Shown here: one piece after another, positions 6,458-41,025 of the stretch
How positions within the stretch are numbered: position 1 is the stretch's first letter
Layout: the number at the start of each line of letters is the position of its first letter
Origin: Perkinsus chesapeaki ATCC PRA-425
Lineage: Eukaryota > Protista > Perkinsozoa
Direction: 5' to 3'
Assembly (NCBI GenBank): GCA_013115145.1
Contig: JAAPAO010000005.1
Span: forward strand, 124,001 to 188,000
Length of the DNA stretch: 64,000 nt
Made by a program: the position numbers and the translations under genes
Notes under the pieces: model-generated
Seen by the model: the letters and a program-made list of their open reading frames with translations, nothing else
The model's database searches: none
Told to the model about the DNA's origin: nothing

Positions 6458-6783
6458 ATTGTATACAGAAGTAATAGGATAGTAACAACAACAACTACCA
6501 CCAACACTTCAAATGATGCTGCTGCTGCTCACAGCAATAACAACAGTATCGCCTTTCACGCTAGCAACGAAAACAATAACAACAGTTCCAGTGCCAAACC
6601 AAGTTACCCTACCAATTCCTCATACAAATTCCTTATTATTATATCCTATATATAATAATACATCCATACCCACAATAATCCCCTTAGGCCTACTATATGT
6701 AACACCAACTACCTCCCCACTCTCTCTATCATTGGTTAATAGCGCTCGCCATTATAATCGATATATGTTCGGCGCAAGGCCGT

Positions 6784-6904
6784 CGGGTTGAACGTAGTAA
6801 CTTTCAGGGTTCAACGTCGTCACTTTCTATAGTGGCCCCTAAAGGGTCCAAAACGCGGGCCTACGGCCCGCTGTCATACCCAGTCCATCGAAGCCTCTCG
6901 AAAA
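6784..6904 (+). repeat. Left terminal inverted repeat, 121 bp
   Basis: CGGGTTGAACGTAGTAACTTTC...GAAGCCTCTCGAAAA, identical base by base to the reverse complement of 10807-10927. Confidence 0.97.
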
Positions 6905-6973
6905 CGCTCTCTACGCTAAGGATTGATAAATGCTTATCCTATGGTTGCTAGTTAAGCGCTCGATGAAAATTCG

Positions 6974-7041
6974 AAAAAACGCTGTCACCGGGGTTCGAAC
7001 CCGTGCCCCCCAAACCAGCCTACAATCACCGACTACCACTA
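6974..7041 (-). ncRNA. Degenerate tRNA-like / Pol III unit (A-box-like, B-box, T6 terminator)
   Basis: Minus strand reads TAGTGGTAGTCGG ... ACGGGTTCGAACCCCGGTGACAGC G TTTTTT. The T-arm is canonical, but the acceptor and anticodon stems do not pair, so it is not a functional tRNA. Confidence 0.4.
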
Positions 7042-8318
7042 TCAAATTATCGAAATTATCAATGCTTCACGATGTTAACGACATACAAGCCTATTCGAAC
7101 GAGCGGGTCGACTTTATCAGACTAAGGATCTTATGTTTCTGGTTGCACGCATGTACAGAAAGGCGCGCCGTAACCCACTATCAATCGATCCCTCTACATT
7201 GTGTATTTGATGAGAAACTGATGTTCCTAATGAGTTGTTGGGATATAAGTGATGCGCATGGTATCGCTGCGAACTTCTCTGTATCCTGTTGTTATGTTGC
7301 GTTCCCGAGTGCGGCGCACCCAGTGCACAAGTGAACTGTGACTGAAACCGTCGTGACGCCGACTCCACCAGTACTGGAACAAACTCAAAGATAAGGAGCA
7401 AGCAGTAGTATGATTCAACAGGCACGCGTACGAGGCATGGCTTTCGGAGGCATGGCTCTTGAAGTATAGGGTCTTGTAGACCCGGTCTACACGGAGCCTC
7501 TGATTGGTGGATATTGTTGGAAACGTGAAGGGTGAGCGTGCCGGCTCATTTGTTACCTAACGGTGGATGAGAAGGAGAAGTGCGATTAGTTCATTTTCAT
7601 GCGTGTCCCGAGCGGAGTTGTCAATAGCGGATGTGGGAAATCAAGGGGGCAATCAGGTTGAAATGGTCACGAGATGCAGCAATCCACACGCTATTTCCAA
7701 CAATTCCAGCCGTGTCCAGGGAAGAAATGCATCAAATCCAGCTTACCTGGAGTCCTTGAGCATCCGATCGCTGATCAAGTCTGCATAACCGTCATCACGC
7801 AAAAATAGAAACGACAAATAAGAGTGGTGGTAATATTTTTTCTACGCCATTAATAACAATAATGGCTGAATGTGGAGAAACTGTATAGTGTCGTTTCTTG
7901 TGAGAATTTGATATTAGGATTCTCACTTTGTAAATATTAGGTTTCTAACAATGAGATTCTGACTAGTAGGGACGATGGTACTCGAAATTATAATTCGTCA
8001 GCGAATATTTTACGTTACGTTTTATTGTGAAGTTAACCAGAAAAGTCCAGGTGATGCGGCTGCCGTTACGGCAGTGCCGTATCACCGCCATACTGGAATA
8101 CGAAATCCCAAGTTCCATTACATCCGATCGTGGCAAAACTGCAAGGTTAATTGTCAATTACAATCAAGTAGTCCTGCAATTTCCAGGCTGGCAATATATC
8201 AATGATTACCAAAAAAGGCTTGCACACCGAAATTTTGTGACGCACTCATTAATGCAATACTTTAAATTGATAACAGCGCTGTCAATCATTAATCTCAGTA
8301 AGAATTCTTACATAATAC

Positions 8319-9629
8319 ATGTCCAGCATCGAAAGCGATCCTCCGCTCGATCCTGAACAGCAATATGCTTTGGAGTACGTGGTTCATAACCTGAATGACA
8401 CGACCGGTGGCAAAAAGTACTTCTATGTCGCTGGTTATGCAGGAACAGGAAAATCCCACCTCCTCAAACAAATTATGGCTACCTTGGCTCCTGAACGGGA
8501 GTCCCTGGCGCTGGCATGGACTGGAATTGCCTCGCAAATTCTCGGGGGTATGACGCTGGTGGCCTTCTGTGGTCTCGAGTTTGACCATACTGGTCATGTT
8601 GCAGACACAGGGTTTATGCGTTGTCGTAGCGAGTTAACCGGTCGTATGATAAGGGGCATGACTGATCGCGGATTGAGGCAAAAAATCCGCGATGGCAAGC
8701 TCTTACTTGTTTTTGATGAGATAGTAGCCATTCATGACTCCGTGCTTGACGCTTTATTGGCGGCCTTCCAAGATCTTCGGAGGGGCCTGATAGGGTGTCA
8801 TGAGCCTTTTGGGGGGATACCGGCAGTTCTCAGTGGAGACCCGTGTCAGCTCGGTCGGATGGAGCTTTACGGGGACTCGCCGAAATTCCCGAGTTCGGAT
8901 TACCCTACTGGTTACTGTTGGGAGGGAATAACCTGGAGTCATATGGCTCCAGATATTCTGTACCTGCAAAAGTTCCACAGAGGTGGTGGTTCGGATACAG
9001 CATATCTCAACCTGTTGGCCGAAATCCGCATGAAACCTCGAGAAGGCGGTGTTCCACAGTTTTCACCTGAAGCCCTCGCCACCCTGGAGAAAACTAGGGA
9101 CAGGGACGGTGGGAAGAAAAAACCAATGTAAGGCTTGCAGGTACGCGTTCTCATGAAAAAAATAAATTCACATTTTTCTATTGCACATTTCTATTTTGTG
9201 TATTTATCTCAGAGAGTACTATACTATAACGTGGAATTTGGTATAAACTATTAATAATACTGTCATATCAGTAATACATAATCATCTAGCAAATGAGATA
9301 ACTATGATAGTGCCACTATCCAGCATTCAAATTCAATTACAACCTAACCGATAGATGATAGAGAAATTCACTTGTGTGAATAGATTCGTGGAGAGACTGA
9401 GACTCAGTCTAAACGCTTCCTACTTTCAGAAAAGATTCTGTTTAGGTTCGACCATGTGACCATATGCCTGACAAACCAACAAGTTGACAAGCTGAACCAA
9501 GAACACCTAAATTCGCTTCCGGGGCAAGAATACTTGCCCGTAACGACTAGAGTGCAGTTCCGTCATGGAACTTCCATCGGAGCACCGTCGCGCACCACGA
9601 TTTGTGTATATCTGCTCTTTGCATATTGA
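8319..9629 (+). CDS. Pif1-family SF1B DNA helicase, 2 exons (8319-9127, 9446-9629), C-terminally incomplete
   Basis: EQQYAL, Walker A VAGYAGTGKS, AWTGIAS..GGMTL, LVFDEI, EPFGGIPAVLSGDPCQL and HR..SDTAYLNLLAEIR are present. A phase-compatible GT-AG intron (9128-9445) adds TICLTNQQVDKLNQEHLNSLPGQEY. No HKSQG motif seen. Confidence 0.9.
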
Positions 9630-10806
9630 CGATTCTACATGACCAGCACAAAACATGTGCACGCGTGCGAAAATTGCGTTACGGCTAGAATACTGTAGAG
9701 CGGTTTCCTCGCTGAATATATAGGTACTTTTCAAGTAGTCACTGCTCCAGCTAAGTCTCGAACGCTCAGTGTAATCTCGATTATTAGTTTCGAGCTGAAA
9801 CTAAATAAAATCAAGTCCCTGCCCGGCTGCTAGAGATCCTTGGGAGCAGGGCACCTTAGCTTAGCTAGCAGTGAACCCTTGAGAGCTACGAGTCATGACC
9901 GGTGACACGGGGTTTTCATTGGGTATCAACTGCGGAATGTATACTACGTAATACGTAGCTACCGCTCCATCGGGGAGAGTCCCGGCCCCATTATGTCCCA
10001 CCCGGGGCATATAGGTCTCCTATCCTAGCCTCGAGGGCAGAGTTTTGCGGGAAAATGTCCCGCATGGCGCAATTTTCTCGTTAATGTCGAATTTACGTTA
10101 GCATAGGGTTTTTAGTAGTATAAGGCGTTTTGAGGAGTAAATGGTTTCTCTAAAGCTTGTGATGACTCGCCACTGGCGGCATAATAACTGTCCCCTTTAC
10201 CTTTAGCTAAGCTTAGGGTTCGCTCAGACCACTCCATATATTAGCTTATACTCACTAAAGTTCAACATTCATTTGAGTCTTATACAAACTCGAGTCTCTT
10301 CTTAAAGTGTCACAACAAACTTCCAACCCAAGAGTTGCAAATGGCATAGAAACCCCTAGCGCATGCGTACAAGTATGCCATTGGTAAACATGAAATAAAG
10401 TGGTGTTGACTAAGACATGCTGTACATAACTGGTTCTCCCGTGCTCTGAGAAATCATCGACGATCGATGCGACAGATGCAATCGAGCATAACAGATACCG
10501 TACGGCGTATGTTGCTGCTGTAGCCCTAAGTGTACGTGCACGAAATTTCGTGCAGTTGCAGGAAGGTGTTAAGAAATGGATGAGTCAGGGCTTCGGTCCA
10601 GGATCTTCCCAATTGATAGAATTTTCTCTGCCCTTCTGCGAGAGAGTCTGAACGTGTTCTGCAGAGCCACACCATCCATCCTCATGTGGCCTCGTCCCGG
10701 AACCTTTCGCAACTTTCACCCAGACTTGGGTTTATTCGATTTACCTGACGCAGGTCAGATATACCACCTTCAAGAGATTGCGGGGTGAGGTTCAGATAAG
10801 GGGGCA

Positions 10807-10927
10807 TTTTCGAGAGGCTTCGATGGACTGGGTATGACAGCGGGCCGTAGGCCCGCGTTTTGGACCCTTTAGGGGCCACTATAGAAAGTGACGACGTTGA
10901 ACCCTGAAAGTTACTACGTTCAACCCG
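10807..10927 (-). repeat. Right terminal inverted repeat, 121 bp
   Basis: Exact reverse complement of 6784-6904. Confidence 0.97.
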
Positions 10928-11292
10928 TGTAGCTCGGCGCAAGTGACCTCTGGGGGTAAAGTACATTCCCGTATAGTACACATTGGACTTGTCTTCTCTT
11001 TTACCTCATTATAACTGTCAGCCATCTTCTTTTTCAGCGGTGTTCCAATTTATCGTTATCATCTGTATTGGTCATTCTGAGCTATTATACGGTTGAGGTT
11101 CATCGTCAGCAGCTAACCTGCACTAACCGGCAATATGCTCCAAGTTAGGGTTGCTCATATCCCCTTACAACTGTTAGTGTGGTGTATCATATACTTGCTC
11201 CATTTTATTGTCGATCCGTGAGTATTGTCTTTTGCACGCATGCACATAGTCTTGTCTCCAAGTTGATATAGGTGACTATATCTGTTATTGAT

Positions 11293-32703: not shown

Positions 32704-33759
32704 TTATACTTTAGACCTATTCCTTATATCATTATGAGATACTATAATACCATCATCATCTGAGTATAACCAATCACCTGGGGTAAAAACAACACCACCA
32801 AATTTAACTGGTACCTATTAATAATAATATAATTATGAGATGCAATAATAATACTCAGTTACATCTATATCTCCAATATCTCTTTTATCAGTTTTACGGG
32901 GATGAGTCCCTAAAGCCTTAACACCAATATTCATACCATTGATAGCTGCAGAATCCCGTATATATCCAAACACTACTATACCTGAAAAGTAGTGATAATA
33001 CTATACCTTATTATATAGGTAATAGTACTATACCTTACTATATAGGTAATAGTACTATACCTTATTATATAGGTAATAATACTATACCTTACTATATAGG
33101 TAATAGTACTATACCTTATTATATAGGTAATAGTACTATACCTTACTATATANNNNNNNNNNNNNNNNNNNNNNNNNNNNNNNNNNNNNNNNNNNNNNNN
33201 NNNNNNNNNNNNNNNNNNNNNNNNNNNNNNNNNNNNNNNNNNNNNNNNNNNATACTATACCTTATTATATAGGTAATAGTACTATACCTTACTATATAGG
33301 TAATAGTACTATACCTTACTATATAGGTAATAGTACTATACCTTATTATATAGGTAATAGTACTATACCTTACTATATAGGTAATAGTACTATACCTTAC
33401 TATATAGGTAATAATACTATACCTTATTATATAGGTAATAGTACCTAGTATTACCTGCCCATCCATTCTTTACAGCTGATGCTGCTATAAGATCTCCAAC
33501 AAGTGCTCTACGATTACTACCACCACCATCTATTACTAATACCTATATCAATATAGAATTTTATAGTGTATATAAGTACCTCTCCTCCTTGAGACGGTGT
33601 CCCTAATAGCTTTTTAACAAAGCTATTATCCTCGTGACATTTAACAGTACGTATCTTACCACAGAATTGTTTATTAATACCATAACTATTAAATATAGGA
33701 TCAACATATTCAACATTATCACCACACCAATCACATATATCAGCTGTAGACCATTCCAT
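32704..33759 (-). CDS. rraA: RraA family protein / HMG aldolase-like, 4 exons
   Basis: [91 protein letters not shown]. Confidence 0.9.
32998..33443. repeat. 27-bp intronic minisatellite spanning an assembly gap (N at 33153-33251)
   Basis: Unit TACTATACCTTAYTATATAGGTAATAG; roughly 5.5 copies before and 7 after the gap. Confidence 0.95.
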
Positions 33760-33938: not shown

Positions 33939-34266
33939 ATGTTTGAAACATTCTTTGACTATATAACAAGCTTGTCATCAAAGGAATCGGTATATGGTCA
34001 GATAGTTAGTGGTGTACCTGATACCTTGAGACCAGGTAATATTATAATCCATACCATTTATCTATTATAATACCTATCATCAGTTATAGTAGTATTGATG
34101 TTCCTACATATAATAGCATTTACTATATGGGGTTTAGTGTTCTTTAAGGATTGGTAATAATATAGGTATATTATTGTTATTCATACCACTCTTTAGTTTC
34201 ATCAAAGCACCTAAGCCACCAGTATTAAGCGATGCTGAAACATTACAGCATAAGAAGACTAAGTAA
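33939..34266 (+). CDS. Small single-pass membrane protein, 3 exons
   Basis: MFETFFDYITSLSSKESVYGQIVSGVPDTLRP | VIVVLMFLHIIAFTIWGLVFFKD | FIKAPKPPVLSDAETLQHKKTK*, joined by GT-AG introns. Confidence 0.55.
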
Positions 34267-34340
34267 CTGTTATGATACTACCTTTCTTAATAAGGATGTA
34301 GTATTGTGTTATAGTGAATCTTATTATGATAGTATTATCT

Positions 34341-37300
34341 ATGTCTTATCGTCGTGTGGATGAGGAGGGGGAGGAAGTGGTAGATCTAGAAGAGGAAGAG
34401 GAAGAGGAAGAGGAAGCTGAAGTATATGATTTAGAAGAGGATGATAGGAATCTAGAAGAGGAACTGCACTGTTCAGTAGAGGTAGTAATATAGTAGTATT
34501 TGAGGGTATAATGGTAGTAATAGGGATTGGGATGCTGGCATACTATTGATAATGAACCAGTATATGTAGCACCACATGATGCATTTGAATGCATAAGGGA
34601 TTTATTAAGGGCATTTAGAGATGATATTGGTAATAATAGTATATAATATAGTGTAGGTAAATATAGGTACATCAAGGAGAGTACATAGGTTACTGGGTAA
34701 ATGGGATGTAGTTAGACAAAAGCTAGTACCAATGCTAATAAGCCATAGAGATGATCTCGATGATAAATGCTTTCAAATATTAAAGTTATTAGTTATACTT
34801 ACTATGCCTGTTAATAAAGGTAGTAGTATAGGGTTGTATATGGAATATTATAGGATGTTAAACAGATACACCAGAGTTAGATACACATTTACAGTATCTA
34901 CAGAACTATAAGACAGCTATAGGGGTTAATGAGGATGTATTAACTATATTTATGACTATTCTAGATCAATGTGTTACTACGAACCTTACTATTACACAAC
35001 AACCACAAGAGCAGCAGCAGGCATCAGCTAGTAGTAATACTGTAAAGGGTATTAATAATATTATAGTAGGTAATATAGAAGTAGATGAGAGTACTAGACG
35101 GTTAAGGCTCCAACAACAGGAATTGGTACTAGTTACTAGGTGGATATTACATAGTAACCACAAGCGGGCCAGGTATTTACATTAGTACGTAATCTACTGG
35201 AAATACCAGACCCTCGACCTGGGGACCCAGGCTTTAATCCAACACATCAGAATCTACAAATGACTATGTTACAGGAACTACATGAATCTGGTTTCTTAGA
35301 CTTTGCTGTACTTGTTATAGAAGAGGCTATAAGTAGGGTATAATAAGGTGGTGGTAGTAGGATGATGATGATGATGTTAGGTGGACCAACACCATCTATT
35401 AATAGGAATAAACATTTAATATGGTTATACTTTGAGATATTATACCATGCTTGTGCTAAGATACGACCAAAGGACTTAGTAACAAGACAGGCAATGATGA
35501 TGTTATTGTCGATAATAGATAACTATTGATGCTCGATTTAAACCAGATCTAACAGCACTTATTAATAAGAGTATAGAAACTCATGCTGCATCATTACCTA
35601 TATTGACTAGACATAACAGATTTGGTAAAAGAGTGGCAGTTAATAGTAATAATAATATTACATTAATATATATTAATATATGCCCTTAGTGCCAGAAGGT
35701 GGTGGTGGAGGAGGAGGATCTTCAATGGGATCTAATGCTACAAAACAGCTAATGTAATGAGCTAGAGGGTAGTGTTGGTAATAATAATAGTTTTTATATT
35801 TAGAAGCGGTAGACAACGACATTACCGTAATAAGCTTGTCGATGAGGCACCCAATGTCTTCCAGGTATACTAAATGTAATGTATATATATGATATATTTA
35901 TTATTAGGATAAAACCTTTACAGATGTTGATGTTGGATGCAAGGTCCCTATAGGGAATATTACCACTGGAGCAGGAGGAGGAGCAGGAGCAGGGGCATTA
36001 GAAGTGTGCTCTTTAGATGGAGGTAGTAGTAGTAGTGGGGTATATAATAGTAACAACACCGTGGTCATAGGTGTAACAACTATCAATTTGGCTGTATGGG
36101 AGAAGTTCTTAAAGAGCTTTGCATCATTTGTTGTGGATATGATTGATAGAGTAATATATATAACTAGTAATAATATATGTCTTTTATTATACTATATAGG
36201 TATTTGCTGGTATAATGTCAGCTGTAATTAAAGCCATTACTGATAGTGAACAGGAACAAGAATATGATGTGGTAAGTAGTAGTAGTAATTGAAGTATTAT
36301 TAGTATTCATTAGGTTAGAGCGCTTAACTTTATAGCATGGTCATTAGATTTTCAAAGGCAAAGTCATGAGTATCATGTAGCAGCTATTAATCATGATAGA
36401 GAGTTAGCTGTAGCAAAGGCAACACAAGCAGGGACACCTATACCACCGCCATTGGAGATTACTGAGGTATATAATGAAGGTATAAGGGATGTTGTTAATA
36501 TGAAGTTAATCAATGTAGATGGTTATTGATATAACATCAGTGGAGCCAGCATTGAATGTGGAGGCTACTGAATTGGTAGCTAGGCAGCTTAGAGTTCATT
36601 CTAAAGAAGCTAAAAGCCTTAAGAAGGGTGGTGCTAGGAATGTTGTAGTATTGAGGGCATTATTAGAACAAATAAGAATGGTAGGGGCTGCTGGTGTTGT
36701 TTTTATAGGGGAATGGGATAGTGGGTATAGATACGGACATGTTTACGATCACCAGATGAAGAGACATCACACGTAGCTGAGATGTTATTAAGTAATGTGC
36801 TATATGAGGATGTACAAACACAATTGGTATGGTTATGCAAGACAGGCTTTAAGAGCACTGTAGCTGATCCTAGGGTTCTAACTCTTAGTAGGCATAATAA
36901 TATTGATAAAGAGGAGGGGTATATTATAGGTGTACAGTGCTTAGCTGAACTACTAAAGGCTATGGAGAAGGTTATGGCAAAAACTGGAAATAAATATAAG
37001 TTTGCAGCTGGGAAGAGGAGAAGGCGTAAGAAAGGTAAGAGTAAGAAGACGAAGAGTAATAAATCAAAAAGTAGTAAATCTAATGGACATCATCATGTTG
37101 AAGGGGGTAATGAAGGTAGAGCAGGTTGATATTAATAGTAAAGGGTAATATAGGTAATGGGGATGATGATGATGAGGCAGGCTCATCAGCTTCATCGTCA
37201 TCATCTAGTGATAGAGAAAACGAAGAGGAAGAGGATAGCGGTGTAGATAATTATGATAATATTAGGGCTGCAGATACATCACAGGAAGCTGTAATAGTAA

Positions 37301-38965
37301 TATATTAATAATTAATAATAATAGTTTTTAGTAATAGATACTAATGGACTTAGCACATACTGATACTATTAATAATCTAATGTATATGTTAGGGGATGGT
37401 TATATAACTAATGGTACATCTATTAATAGTGATTGTGTGTATCTATTATCACAATTGATATCATTAAGGGTAGTAAAGAGTAGAAGTATATTAGTATTCT
37501 TATTCACTTAGCCATGTAATATAGCATTCTTCTTTCAATTGTCGCATTTAATAGTATTCCATAAGATATTAACAGATCCTAAGATATATATTAATCGAAA
37601 ACAGCATCATTATGTTATAAGTAATAATAATAGTAGTAGTACGAGTGGTATATATCTTATATAGAGTTTTGTTCCTTTGTATCAAGGAGGTTCTTACAGA
37701 CTGCTATGAAGAATAGTTGTGTATATGTGGAGGCCATATTCCCTAAATTAAGAGGAGGAAGGTTGGTATTATAATAAGGGGATATAATGATGATGATGAT
37801 GATGGTGGTGTTGTTGTTAGGGGAGGGCAACTTATGTCTATGGAAGCTGAGTTTAATGGTATATTAACAGACTATAATGATGATGATAGTAAGGATATAC
37901 TACAACGTATGCATGAAGGGGAAGCGTAATACTAATAGGATAGGGAAAAGGGATAATAGTAATAGTAGATACGAGGCAATGAAGGCAGCAGCTAGTGGCA
38001 AGATATTGGAGGAAATATCATCTGGCCCACCATGGAGTGAAGATGAAGATGATTTGTTGAGAAGACTATGGGATGATTATAAACATGCACCTGATAGATA
38101 TGGTATAATAGCAATTAATCTACCTATACATGAGTAAGGGGGTAGTAGGTGGTAATGGTGATGAGTGGTAATTAGTGATGGTTATGAGAGATCTGCTACT
38201 GATGTTAAGAGAAGGCTAGCTGAGATTGGTATAGCAACTAGACAGGATAATAATAATGATGAGGATGATGAGGGTAATAATGCTTATTAGTAATGACGTT
38301 ATTATGGTGGAATAGCTCATGAGAACTTACCAGAGGCGGCGAGTGATAGTAGAAGTGATGAGGAAGATAATGCATCATCCCCGCCCTCTCCTGATGATGA
38401 TGATGAGGAGGATGGTTTTGATATTGATAGGATAAGAAGGCAAATGCATGATGGTGAAAGGGGCGCTACTGAAGGGGGAGGGATGGAGGGTACTAGAGAA
38501 TACAGTGATGAGGAGGATGAGGAGGAGGATGGTATAGGGTTTAGTGAGGATGAGGAGGAAAGTGGGAATGAAGAGAATGTACCATCGGAGGCTAATAGGC
38601 CGCCACAAACTGATAAAGTTGAGGAGAATGATGCTGATGTTGATGTTGAGATGCAAGATGTTAGTGATAGCTCAGATCATCTTAGATCATCCCATTCAGA
38701 TGATAAAGTAGTAGTAGGTTTGGGAGGTAATAAGGTGGTGCTAAAACGGTGTTATATATAGGATGTTGTTGTTGTTATAGATAATATGCCTGAATTTGAT
38801 GATTTACGACTAGGCCTTAAGAAGCTGTTGGATGAGATTAATAATGATGATGATAAGGATTATAATAATAGTATATCATCATACTTTAATAAGGTCGAAT
38901 TGGATATACTTGGACCTGAAGGCCTCGCTATGTTAGAGAATGCTGTACATAATAATACTTGTTAA
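34341..38965 (+). CDS. TIMELESS: Timeless/Tof1/Swi1 replication-fork protection protein, many exons
   Basis: EPVYVAPHDAFECIRDLLRAFRDD; LVPMLISH...ILKLLVILTMP; YLQNYKTA; RNLLEIPD; C-terminal WSEDEDDLLRRLWDDYK Myb-like repeat; acidic tail. Confidence 0.8.
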
Positions 38966-39123
38966 TAATAATAATTACACAACTACTCCAATCATACTCC
39001 TTCCTATCATGCATAATCACGTTTCCCTATTAAACCCCCTATTATGTGTTGAAAGAGCGGTATGGCTGACGGCTGACATTGTTGTAAGGTGTATAGTTTG
39101 TCTTTGTTGCTGTTGTTTTTGTT

Positions 39124-41025
<1,902 letters not shown>

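What the first reader, a model, noticed from the sequence alone, without database searches (positions are those of the whole stretch)
6769..10943. Inverted-repeat element with a 10-bp target duplication whose only recognisable cargo is a Pif1 helicase
Seen: perfect 121-bp inverted repeats, a 10-bp direct repeat just outside them, a Pif1/SF1B helicase gene and no DDE, HUH or YR catalytic motif I can recognise. Known: Pif1 helicases are typical of Helitrons, which lack long TIRs and TSDs. SF1 helicases with TIRs occur in Polintons, Tlr1 and transpovirons, but Polinton TSDs are about 6 bp. TSDs of 9-10 bp with long TIRs fit Mutator-like and AcademH elements, and AcademH carries an SF2 RecQ-type helicase instead. 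Inference: the combination fits none of these cleanly. It may be a deletion derivative of an undescribed TIR-plus-Pif1 transposon family, or a Pack-MULE-like element that captured a Pif1 gene. Identical TIRs suggest recent insertion.
Basis: partly seen in the sequence, partly recalled or inferred. Interest (0 to 1): 0.9.

Follow-up and report, generated by a model that had tools for sequence, protein, structure and literature searches.

The report
Deleted copy of helicase-fused Mutator transposon
This 4.2-kb insert in the clam parasite Perkinsus chesapeaki is a crippled copy of a Mutator-like jumping gene, and intact relatives in Perkinsus encode one giant protein that joins a complete Pif1 DNA helicase to the cutting enzyme, a combination I found described nowhere.

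Summary
Window 6779-10933 is a 4155-bp insert. Its inverted-repeat arms are 129 nt long with a perfect core of about 121 nt. A 10-bp direct repeat (6769-6778 / 10934-10943) flanks it. The only recognisable coding content is the N-terminal part of a Pif1 helicase.

The window is Perkinsus chesapeaki contig JAAPAO010000005.1; it is not human and not viral.

Full-length relatives in P. marinus and P. olseni, and on unidentified Logan contigs, have homologous terminal repeats and 9-11-bp target duplications. Each carries one large gene in which the same Pif1 exons continue, across a conserved intron, into the second helicase half, a MULE DDE transposase domain and a SWIM-like motif. In two elements the second helicase half and the MULE domain lie in one uninterrupted ORF.

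The window copy keeps only the first two exons and has no transposase sequence. It is therefore a non-autonomous internal-deletion derivative of a Pif1-MULE fusion family, not a Pack-MULE, Helitron, Polinton or AcademH.

The copy itself is ordinary. The family is unusual: the helicase-bearing DDE transposons named in the papers I could read (AcademH, KolobokH) carry DEAD/Helicase_C- or RecQ-type helicases. I found no description of a Pif1-MULE fusion, but Repbase could not be searched. I rate it a new variant of a known kind.

The parts
6769..6778 (.). Left copy of the target-site duplication (TCGGCGCAAG). The true length is 9 or 10 bp, depending on whether G6778 belongs to the duplication or to the element tip.
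   Evidence: Read directly. The same string lies at 10934-10943. Relatives L004 and L009 have 9- and 9-11-bp flanking repeats in the same position.
6779..6912 (+). Left terminal inverted repeat. It has a 6-nt variable tip (6779-6784), two about-22-nt direct sub-repeats (6785-6806, 6807-6828), and a G+C-rich hairpin motif (6854-6871, 7-bp stem) about 75 nt from the tip.
   Evidence: The architecture and hairpin motif are shared with the ends of MULE-encoding elements in L004, L009 and L010 and with the element end in L006, whose transposase was not detected.
6913..8318 (+). 5' internal region with no recognisable coding content. It is presumed to be the promoter and leader of the fusion gene.
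   Evidence: No Pfam hits for its ORFs, no Rfam or tRNA hits, and no tblastx match to relatives.
8319..9629 (+). Remnant of the Pif1-MULE fusion gene, given as one part because the gene is broken. It holds exon 1 (Pif1 domain 1A; Pfam match aa 10-179 = 8346-8855), a predicted GT..AG intron at 9128-9445 that relatives share, a short second exon, and then read-through to the first stop. The gene is broken once, by a single internal deletion. There are no stops or frameshifts in the retained exons.
   Evidence: Walker A, Walker B and the GD..Q motif are invariant in 12 family members.
9630..10798 (+). 3' internal region with no recognisable coding content and no similarity to the relatives fetched.
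10799..10933 (-). Right terminal inverted repeat. It has a 7-nt variable tip at 10927-10933 and the hairpin motif at 10840-10857.
10934..10943 (.). Right copy of the target-site duplication.
   Evidence: Read directly.

Best explanation
Window 6779-10933 is a non-autonomous, internally deleted copy of a Mutator-like (MULE) DNA transposon family of the genus Perkinsus.

Intact members of this family encode a single protein of about 1,500-1,600 residues. It contains a complete SF1B Pif1 helicase (domains 1A and 2A/2B), a conserved Cys/His-rich region, a MULE DDE transposase domain and a SWIM-like motif.

Shown here:
- The window copy retains both TIRs, the target duplication and the first two exons (helicase 1A).
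- It lacks the second helicase half and the entire transposase.

Inferred:
- It inserted by DDE cut-and-paste with a 9-10-bp staggered target cut.
- It cannot move on its own. It could move only if a cognate full-length element supplied the fusion protein in trans. That protein would probably bind the paired ~22-nt sub-repeats and the hairpin motif in each TIR.
- The deletion arose by interrupted gap repair after excision, as in other deletion derivatives.
- In the parent family the helicase is part of the transposition machinery. Its ATPase motifs are invariant across copies that are 29-53% identical to the window's ORF. It most likely processes or unwinds DNA at the transposon ends, or promotes repair synthesis at the donor gap.
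For: 1. Identity of the window. The exact 270-aa ORF is on P. chesapeaki GCA_013115145.1 contig JAAPAO010000005.1. The JAAPAO prefix is named as P. chesapeaki in PMC11513098.

2. Conserved gene order. Five loci (L003, L004, L005, L009, L010) carry a Pif1-1A ORF followed on the same strand by a homologue of P0008. L008 has the same order but lacks most of the second helicase half. The MULE ORFs of L003 and L005 are 36-42% identical to that of L004.

3. The fusion is real.
- The N-terminus of the 960-aa MULE ORF of L004 (aa 21-134) matches solved Pif1 structures at residues ~270-375, and Pfam MULE lies at aa 740-839 of the same uninterrupted ORF.
- The 937-aa ORF of L005 likewise covers both regions.
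- The second helicase half is open and conserved in five loci.
- Annotated products P0020 (PIF1 3-166 plus MULE 503-601) and P0154 join both domains.
- P0004 and P0009 join exon 1 to the next exons. P0009 aligns to a Pif1 structure across the junction.
- A GT donor sits at the same point after exon 1 in the window, L003, L005 and L010. For the window and L003 I checked by reading that the joins are in frame.

4. The window copy is deleted. It matches L003 only over exon 1 (60% aa) and the short second exon (77% aa). tblastn with P0008 finds nothing in all 64 kb.

5. Homologous ends. The TIR tips of the window, L004 and L006 align. The hairpin motif lies 75-80 nt from the tip in the window, L004, L006 and L009. 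L010 carries the same motif, but its tip was not defined. The strict 18-nt pattern occurs nowhere else in the window or in L004 and is expected 0 times by chance.

6. Target duplications. All three complete elements have one: 10, 9 and 11 identical bases, all compatible with 9 bp. The MULE range is 8-11 bp (PMC6446971).

7. Family limits. About 20 clusters score E 1e-75 to 1e-16, followed by a gap to generic Pif1. Every named member is from P. olseni, P. marinus or P. chesapeaki.
Against: - No full-length element with the window's own TIR sequence was found. The closest Pif1 relative is only 60% identical and sits on an unidentified Logan contig. A trans-acting partner in P. chesapeaki is therefore not demonstrated.
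- Only one copy of this TIR was seen, because the rest of the genome could not be searched by DNA.
- No empty-site allele could be examined.
- The internal 5' and 3' regions show no similarity to the relatives fetched. Descent by simple deletion therefore rests on the TIRs and the two exons.
- Splicing of the first intron rests on gene models and conserved splice signals, not on transcript data.
- The role of the helicase is pure inference.
Confidence: 0.85

Rival explanations
1. Pack-MULE-like element: a non-autonomous MULE that picked up a fragment of a cellular Pif1 gene.
For: MULE-type TIRs and duplication with a gene fragment in between. Pack-MULEs are a known habit of the superfamily (PMC6431247).
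Against: - The fragment's nearest relatives are all element-borne exons that lie upstream of a MULE ORF on the same strand.
- Generic Pif1 proteins score far lower, E of 1e-13 or worse.
- The intron position and the following exon are shared with the fusion genes.
Confidence: 0.04
2. The truncated Pif1-1A gene is itself the point. Either it is a retained or domesticated ATPase fragment, for example a regulator of the family, or the element is mobilised by a helicase-only mechanism.
For: Exon 1 is fully open. Walker A, Walker B and the GD..Q motif are intact. The ORF is annotated as a protein in NCBI.
Against: - A single RecA-like half cannot form the helicase ATP site and motor.
- The copy is a singleton.
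- Open exons are equally expected from a young deletion copy with perfect TIRs.
- No expression data are available.
Confidence: 0.06
3. Derivative of a Helitron, or of a Polinton, Tlr1 or transpoviron-type element that carries an SF1 helicase.
Against: - The window and every related locus lack Rep/HUH, protein-primed polymerase, integrase and capsid matches.
- TIRs plus 9-11-bp duplications do not fit these families.
- Among the 80 nearest non-family Pif1 proteins, no Helitron_like_N appears in the 25 most frequent of 35 matched Pfam families.
- The partner domain in relatives is MULE.
Confidence: 0.02
4. Member of AcademH or KolobokH, the DDE transposon lineages already known to carry helicases.
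For: AcademH makes 9-10-bp duplications (PMC10045372). Both lineages combine a DDE transposase with a helicase.
Against: - Their helicases are of the DEAD/Helicase_C or RecQ type, and in KolobokH the helicase lies downstream of the transposase. Here the helicase is SF1B Pif1 and lies upstream.
- The transposase passes Pfam's MULE threshold: 41.5 and 37.8 bits against a cut-off of 27.6.
Confidence: 0.03

Closest known systems
MuDR / Mutator-like elements (MULEs)
   Same: - Long TIRs (about 130 nt here; 112-579 nt in relatives).
- 9-11-bp target duplications.
- In full-length relatives, a Pfam MULE DDE domain followed by a SWIM-like CxC..CxH motif.
- Frequent non-autonomous deletion derivatives.
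   Different: - The transposase of the full-length relatives carries a complete Pif1 helicase at its N-terminus.
- The MULE survey I could read (PMC6446971) contains neither the word 'helicase' nor 'Perkinsus', nor any word beginning 'alveolat'.
- The window copy has no transposase at all.
AcademH and KolobokH (helicase-encoding DDE transposons)
   Same: A cut-and-paste DDE transposon that also encodes a helicase. AcademH also makes 9-10-bp duplications.
   Different: Different transposase superfamily, different helicase superfamily (DEAD/Helicase_C or RecQ type versus SF1B Pif1) and different domain order. Those lineages are reported from animals, fungi and a red alga, not from alveolates.
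Helitron Rep-Hel
   Same: A Pif1-family helicase fused in one polypeptide to the element's DNA-cleaving enzyme.
   Different: Helitrons use an HUH nuclease and have no TIRs or target duplication. Here the partner is a DDE MULE domain, with TIRs and duplications. The nearest outside relatives of this helicase are generic Pif1 proteins, not Rep-Hel proteins.
Pack-MULEs
   Same: A MULE-ended, transposase-less element with a gene fragment inside.
   Different: The fragment is the element's own 5' exons, not captured host DNA.
Classical internal-deletion derivatives (Ds from Ac, dSpm, deleted P and MuDR elements; from general knowledge)
   Same: Both ends and the 5' part of the transposase gene are kept while the catalytic part is lost. 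Movement depends on an autonomous partner.
   Different: No autonomous partner with the same TIR sequence has yet been seen for this copy.

Membership tests
MULE / MuDR superfamily | DDE transposase with the MULE catalytic domain, in the window element itself | tested here: not met
   No Pfam MULE hit in any ORF tested, and no tblastn match to P0008 in the window. This is as expected for a non-autonomous copy.
MULE / MuDR superfamily | DDE transposase with the MULE catalytic domain, in elements with homologous ends and homologous Pif1 exons | tested here: met
   PF10551 scores 41.5 bits (P0008, L004) and 37.8 bits (P0020, L008) against a cut-off of 27.6. L005 and P0154 score below the cut-off. 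L009 and L010 match P0008 over the same region. Homologous ends were shown for L004, L009 and L010 only; no TIR was found in L008, L005 or L003.
MULE / MuDR superfamily | Target-site duplication of 8-11 bp | tested here: met
   Window 9-10 bp, L004 9 bp, L009 9-11 bp. The 8-11 bp range is from PMC6446971.
MULE / MuDR superfamily | Long terminal inverted repeats | tested here: met
   Arms of 129 nt (window), 579 nt (L004) and 112 nt or more (L009).
MULE / MuDR superfamily | Zinc finger (SWIM type) C-terminal to the DDE domain | tested here: inconclusive
   P0008 is named 'SWIM-type domain-containing protein' by UniProt and shows a CxC..CxH string. Pfam's SWIM model did not report a hit at E <= 0.05.
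Helitron | Rep/HUH nuclease domain; no TIRs; no target duplication | tested here: not met
   No Helitron_like_N or other HUH match in the window or relatives. TIRs and duplications are present.
Polinton / Tlr1 / transpoviron | Protein-primed polymerase (or its inactivated fusion to the helicase), retroviral-type integrase, capsid genes; duplication of about 6 bp in Polintons | tested here: not met
None of these domains appears in the window element or in the 10-15-kb full-length relatives. Duplications are 9-11 bp.
AcademH | DEAD/Helicase_C (SF2-type) helicase with an Academ transposase; 9-10-bp duplication | tested here: not met
   The helicase is Pif1 and the transposase hits Pfam MULE. Only the duplication length agrees. 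No Academ reference protein was available for a direct comparison.
Pack-MULE | Internal sequence derived from host genes | tested here: not met
   The nearest relatives of the internal ORF are the 5' exons of element-borne fusion genes. Host-type Pif1 proteins are far more distant.

The most novel reading that the evidence does not exclude
Perkinsus harbours a previously undescribed MULE lineage in which a complete SF1B Pif1 helicase is fused to the N-terminus of the DDE transposase. This would be a third, independent marriage of a helicase with a cut-and-paste transposase, after AcademH and KolobokH. It would also be the first such case with the helicase type otherwise tied to Helitrons, which suggests that helicase recruitment is a recurrent solution in eukaryotic DNA transposition.
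Probability: 0.55. Interest if true: 0.65.

Novelty: new variant of a known kind. Interest (0 to 1): 0.55.

Why it matters
The window copy on its own is a routine dead-end derivative, useful mainly for annotation. The 270-aa 'ATP-dependent DNA helicase' gene model is a transposon remnant, not a host helicase.

The family behind it is more interesting. Among the transposons named in the papers I read, Pif1 helicases are attributed only to Helitrons, where the helicase is fused to an HUH nuclease. [quoted passage not shown]

That gives a natural comparison set (Helitron, AcademH, KolobokH and this family) for asking what a helicase contributes to DNA transposition. It also shows that several Perkinsus 'helicase' and 'SWIM-domain' gene models are split pieces of one transposase gene.

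Tried and rejected
- tRNA and Rfam scans of the window and of the element found nothing. The tRNA-like string near the left end is not a detectable tRNA.
- Two word-index protein searches with the P. olseni fusion protein, whole and over the MULE region, returned only the query itself. Family distribution therefore rests on the exhaustive search with the 270-aa ORF.
- JGI metagenome scans with peptide patterns of the ORF and with the 33-nt TIR tip found no relatives.
- The viral-contig scan could not run because the alignment had no stretch conserved enough.
- I looked for an empty-site or second haplotype through an exact look-up of a flanking RING-finger gene. Only the same contig came back.
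- blastn and tblastx of the element's non-coding parts against all fetched loci and the rest of the window found no similarity.
- Ten literature searches for a Pif1 or other helicase in MULEs, or for Perkinsus transposons of this kind, found no description. The AcademH paper itself is not held. Repbase and Dfam are not searchable here.
- I ran no structure prediction. The full fusion protein exceeds the size limit, and the Pfam and PDB sequence matches were already decisive.
- The Helitron, Polinton-type, AcademH, KolobokH and Pack-MULE readings were considered and rejected for the reasons given under rivals.
Full report
**Origin of the window.** The exact 270-aa product of ORF 8319-9131 is recorded once, on contig JAAPAO010000005.1 of assembly GCA_013115145.1. 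The accession prefix JAAPAO is given as Perkinsus chesapeaki in PMC11513098. P. chesapeaki is an alveolate parasite of clams. The surrounding genes are ordinary eukaryotic genes: RING-finger paralogues, a MutS homologue and an ALMT-like transporter. The contig is not human and nothing in it looks viral.

**Check of the observation.**
- The repeat finder reports one outstanding inverted repeat, arms 6784-6912 and 10799-10927, 129 nt and 98% complementary.
- By reading, the core is perfect for about 121 nt, and the differences lie at the inner edge.
- The 39-nt tip occurs exactly twice in 64 kb, against none expected.
- The direct repeat TCGGCGCAAG lies at 6769-6778 and 10934-10943.
- The repeat does not touch the perfect inverted repeat. 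Six and seven imperfectly matching bases lie between them.
- The insert is compositionally distinct: 46.2% G+C against 38-39% on either side.
- It sits between two divergently oriented gene calls.

**The helicase ORF.**
- ORF 8319-9131 matches Pfam PIF1 (2.6e-19) only over profile positions 2-153 of 223.
- It matches solved Pif1 structures only over their first ~200 residues. The ORF is therefore the first RecA-like half of a helicase.
- The other ORFs of the insert have no Pfam match above threshold.

**Relatives.**
- A word-index search found six proteins of similar length. The four with a source name are from Perkinsus; two are unnamed Logan proteins.
- The exhaustive search found a sharply bounded family of about 20 clusters (E 1e-75 to 1e-16), and only then generic Pif1 proteins from E 1e-13 on.
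- Every named member is from P. olseni, P. marinus or P. chesapeaki. The rest are unnamed Logan contigs.
- I fetched nine loci that carry family members.

**The key result: one Pif1-MULE fusion gene.**
- In L004 (P. olseni) the Pif1-1A ORF lies inside a ~15-kb element with 579-nt TIRs. It is followed on the same strand by a 960-aa ORF.
- That ORF has the Pfam MULE transposase domain at residues 740-839. Its first ~130 residues match solved Pif1 structures at residues ~270-375, the second helicase half.
- Helicase 2A/2B and the DDE domain are thus in one uninterrupted reading frame. The same holds for the 937-aa ORF of L005.
- The order 1A ORF, then 2A-plus-MULE ORF recurs in L003, L005, L009 and L010; their MULE ORFs are 29-42% identical to P0008. 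L008 has the same order but lacks most of the 2A part.
- The 2A region is open and conserved in five loci.
- The apparent stop that ends the 1A ORF coincides with a canonical GT donor in the window, L003, L005 and L010.
- Joining the window's and L003's predicted exons as they stand keeps the frame and gives the motif that follows domain 1A in Pif1 structures.
- Public gene models already make these joins. P0004 and P0009 run from exon 1 into the next exons. P0020 and P0154 contain both PIF1 and MULE matches in one product.
- Across 12 family members (29-53% identical to the window's ORF) the Walker A, Walker B and GD..Q motif residues are invariant, which argues for selection on ATPase function.

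**What the window copy has and lacks.**
- It matches its closest relative (L003) over exon 1 (60% aa identity) and over the short second exon (77%), and nowhere else.
- tblastn with the 1269-aa P. olseni protein P0008 gives only noise across the whole 64 kb.
- The fusion gene is therefore broken once, by one internal deletion. The deletion removes the second helicase half, the linker, the DDE domain and the C-terminal region.
- The retained exons contain no stops or frameshifts.
- The remaining 5' and 3' internal DNA has no detectable similarity to the relatives fetched, to the rest of the window, to Pfam or to Rfam.

**Ends and duplications.**
- The TIR tips of the window, L004 and L006 align (I use the alignment, not the consensus line the tool printed).
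- L009 and L010 show the same plan by reading: a 6-7-nt variable tip beginning with G (not defined for L010), two direct sub-repeats of about 22 nt, and a G+C-rich hairpin with a 7-bp stem.
- The hairpin lies 75-80 nt from the tip in the window, L004, L006 and L009. The tip of L010 was not defined.
- The strict 18-nt hairpin pattern occurs only in these TIR positions in the window and L004, against 0 expected in the window. In L006 it marks the presumed left end. L009 and L010 carry variants found with a looser stem pattern.
- With the variable tips counted as element sequence, the flanking direct repeats abut the ends in all three complete elements: 10 identical bases in the window, 9 in L004 and 11 in L009. 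All are compatible with a 9-bp duplication.
- MULEs make 8-11-bp duplications and typically have long TIRs (PMC6446971).

**Interpretation.** The element is a non-autonomous internal-deletion derivative of a Perkinsus MULE family whose transposase is fused to a Pif1 helicase.
- Shown: the anatomy, the homology of ends and exons, the absence of the transposase, and the fusion in relatives.
- Inferred: insertion by DDE cut-and-paste with a staggered 9-10-bp cut.
- Inferred: dependence on a full-length partner.
- Inferred: origin of the deletion by interrupted gap repair.
- Inferred: a role for the helicase at the transposon ends or in donor-gap repair synthesis. MULE transposition is reported to resemble that of hAT and Transib elements and V(D)J recombination (PMC5499845, title seen).
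- No partner with the same TIR sequence was seen. The other two P. chesapeaki family members fetched (L002, L007) are divergent. L002 is truncated once, and L007 lies at a contig start with no transposase detected downstream.

**Comparison with known families.**
- Membership in the MULE superfamily is met for TIRs and duplication length. It is met through relatives for the DDE domain. It is not met for the window copy's own coding content, as for any non-autonomous element.
- Helitron and Polinton-type readings fail on their defining enzymes and on the presence of TIRs and duplications.
- The 80 nearest non-family Pif1 proteins show generic architectures. No Helitron_like_N or MULE appears among the 25 most frequent of the 35 Pfam families matched.
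- AcademH and KolobokH are the nearest functional analogues, being DDE transposons with helicases. They carry DEAD/Helicase_C- or RecQ-type helicases and belong to other transposase superfamilies.
- I found no paper describing a Pif1-MULE fusion or this Perkinsus family. Repbase and Dfam could not be consulted, so prior description there cannot be excluded.

- The exon joins for the window and L003 were checked by reading only, across an intron whose GT donor is shared by L005 and L010.
- Slip: three places record the window coordinate at which similarity to full-length relatives ends, which amounts to the place of the break. They are notebook entry 3, the script output and the script output.
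- The 18-nt degenerate search pattern used was made from two natural TIR copies that differ at one base.
- Proposed follow-up is descriptive only.

Noticed in passing
window 6975-7010: A string resembling the T-arm and acceptor 3' half of a tRNA lies just inside the left TIR. ARAGORN and Rfam report no tRNA. P. marinus is known to host tRNA-targeting Dada transposons (PMC3706591), so it may be a relic of such a target or of a tRNA-derived insert.
   Followed up: partly
window 32995-33152 and 33253-33444: Two arrays of a 27-nt tandem repeat (5.9 and 7.1 copies, 93-96% matches), about 100 nt apart.
   Followed up: no
window 34000-40000: Low G+C (0.35) with a very strong positive GC skew (+0.26 to +0.41), unlike the rest of the window.
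   Followed up: no
L004 6427-9973 and 18195-19424: The full-length P. olseni element carries a ~3.5-kb internal array of 16/32/96-nt repeats that runs in frame into the start of its Pif1 ORF. It also has a 1.2-kb array of 42-nt repeats next to the right TIR that is partly inverted-repeated with the left end. This recalls the subterminal minisatellites noted for Rehavkus-type MULEs.
   Followed up: partly
L004 11053-11492: A hairpin-like inverted repeat with 182-nt arms (93%) and a 76-nt loop sits inside the first intron of the fusion gene. It is possibly a nested miniature element.
   Followed up: no
L006 4491-8440: Two Pif1-1A copies lie in tandem in P. olseni, each followed by the same 46-nt palindrome, next to a reverse-transcriptase gene. 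A family-type left end lies at about 1553-1650, but no matching right end was found on the contig.
   Followed up: partly
L004, L008, L009 and L010 gene models: Public annotations split the fusion gene into separate 'ATP-dependent DNA helicase', 'SWIM-type domain-containing' or 'MULE transposase domain-containing' proteins (P0005 plus P0008, P0021, P0011, P0157). Several Perkinsus helicase entries in UniProt are therefore transposase fragments.
   Followed up: partly
P0008 residues ~490-600 (L004) and the matching part of P0154: A conserved Cys/His-rich stretch lies between the helicase and the DDE domain and has no Pfam match. It may be the DNA-binding domain of the transposase.
   Followed up: no
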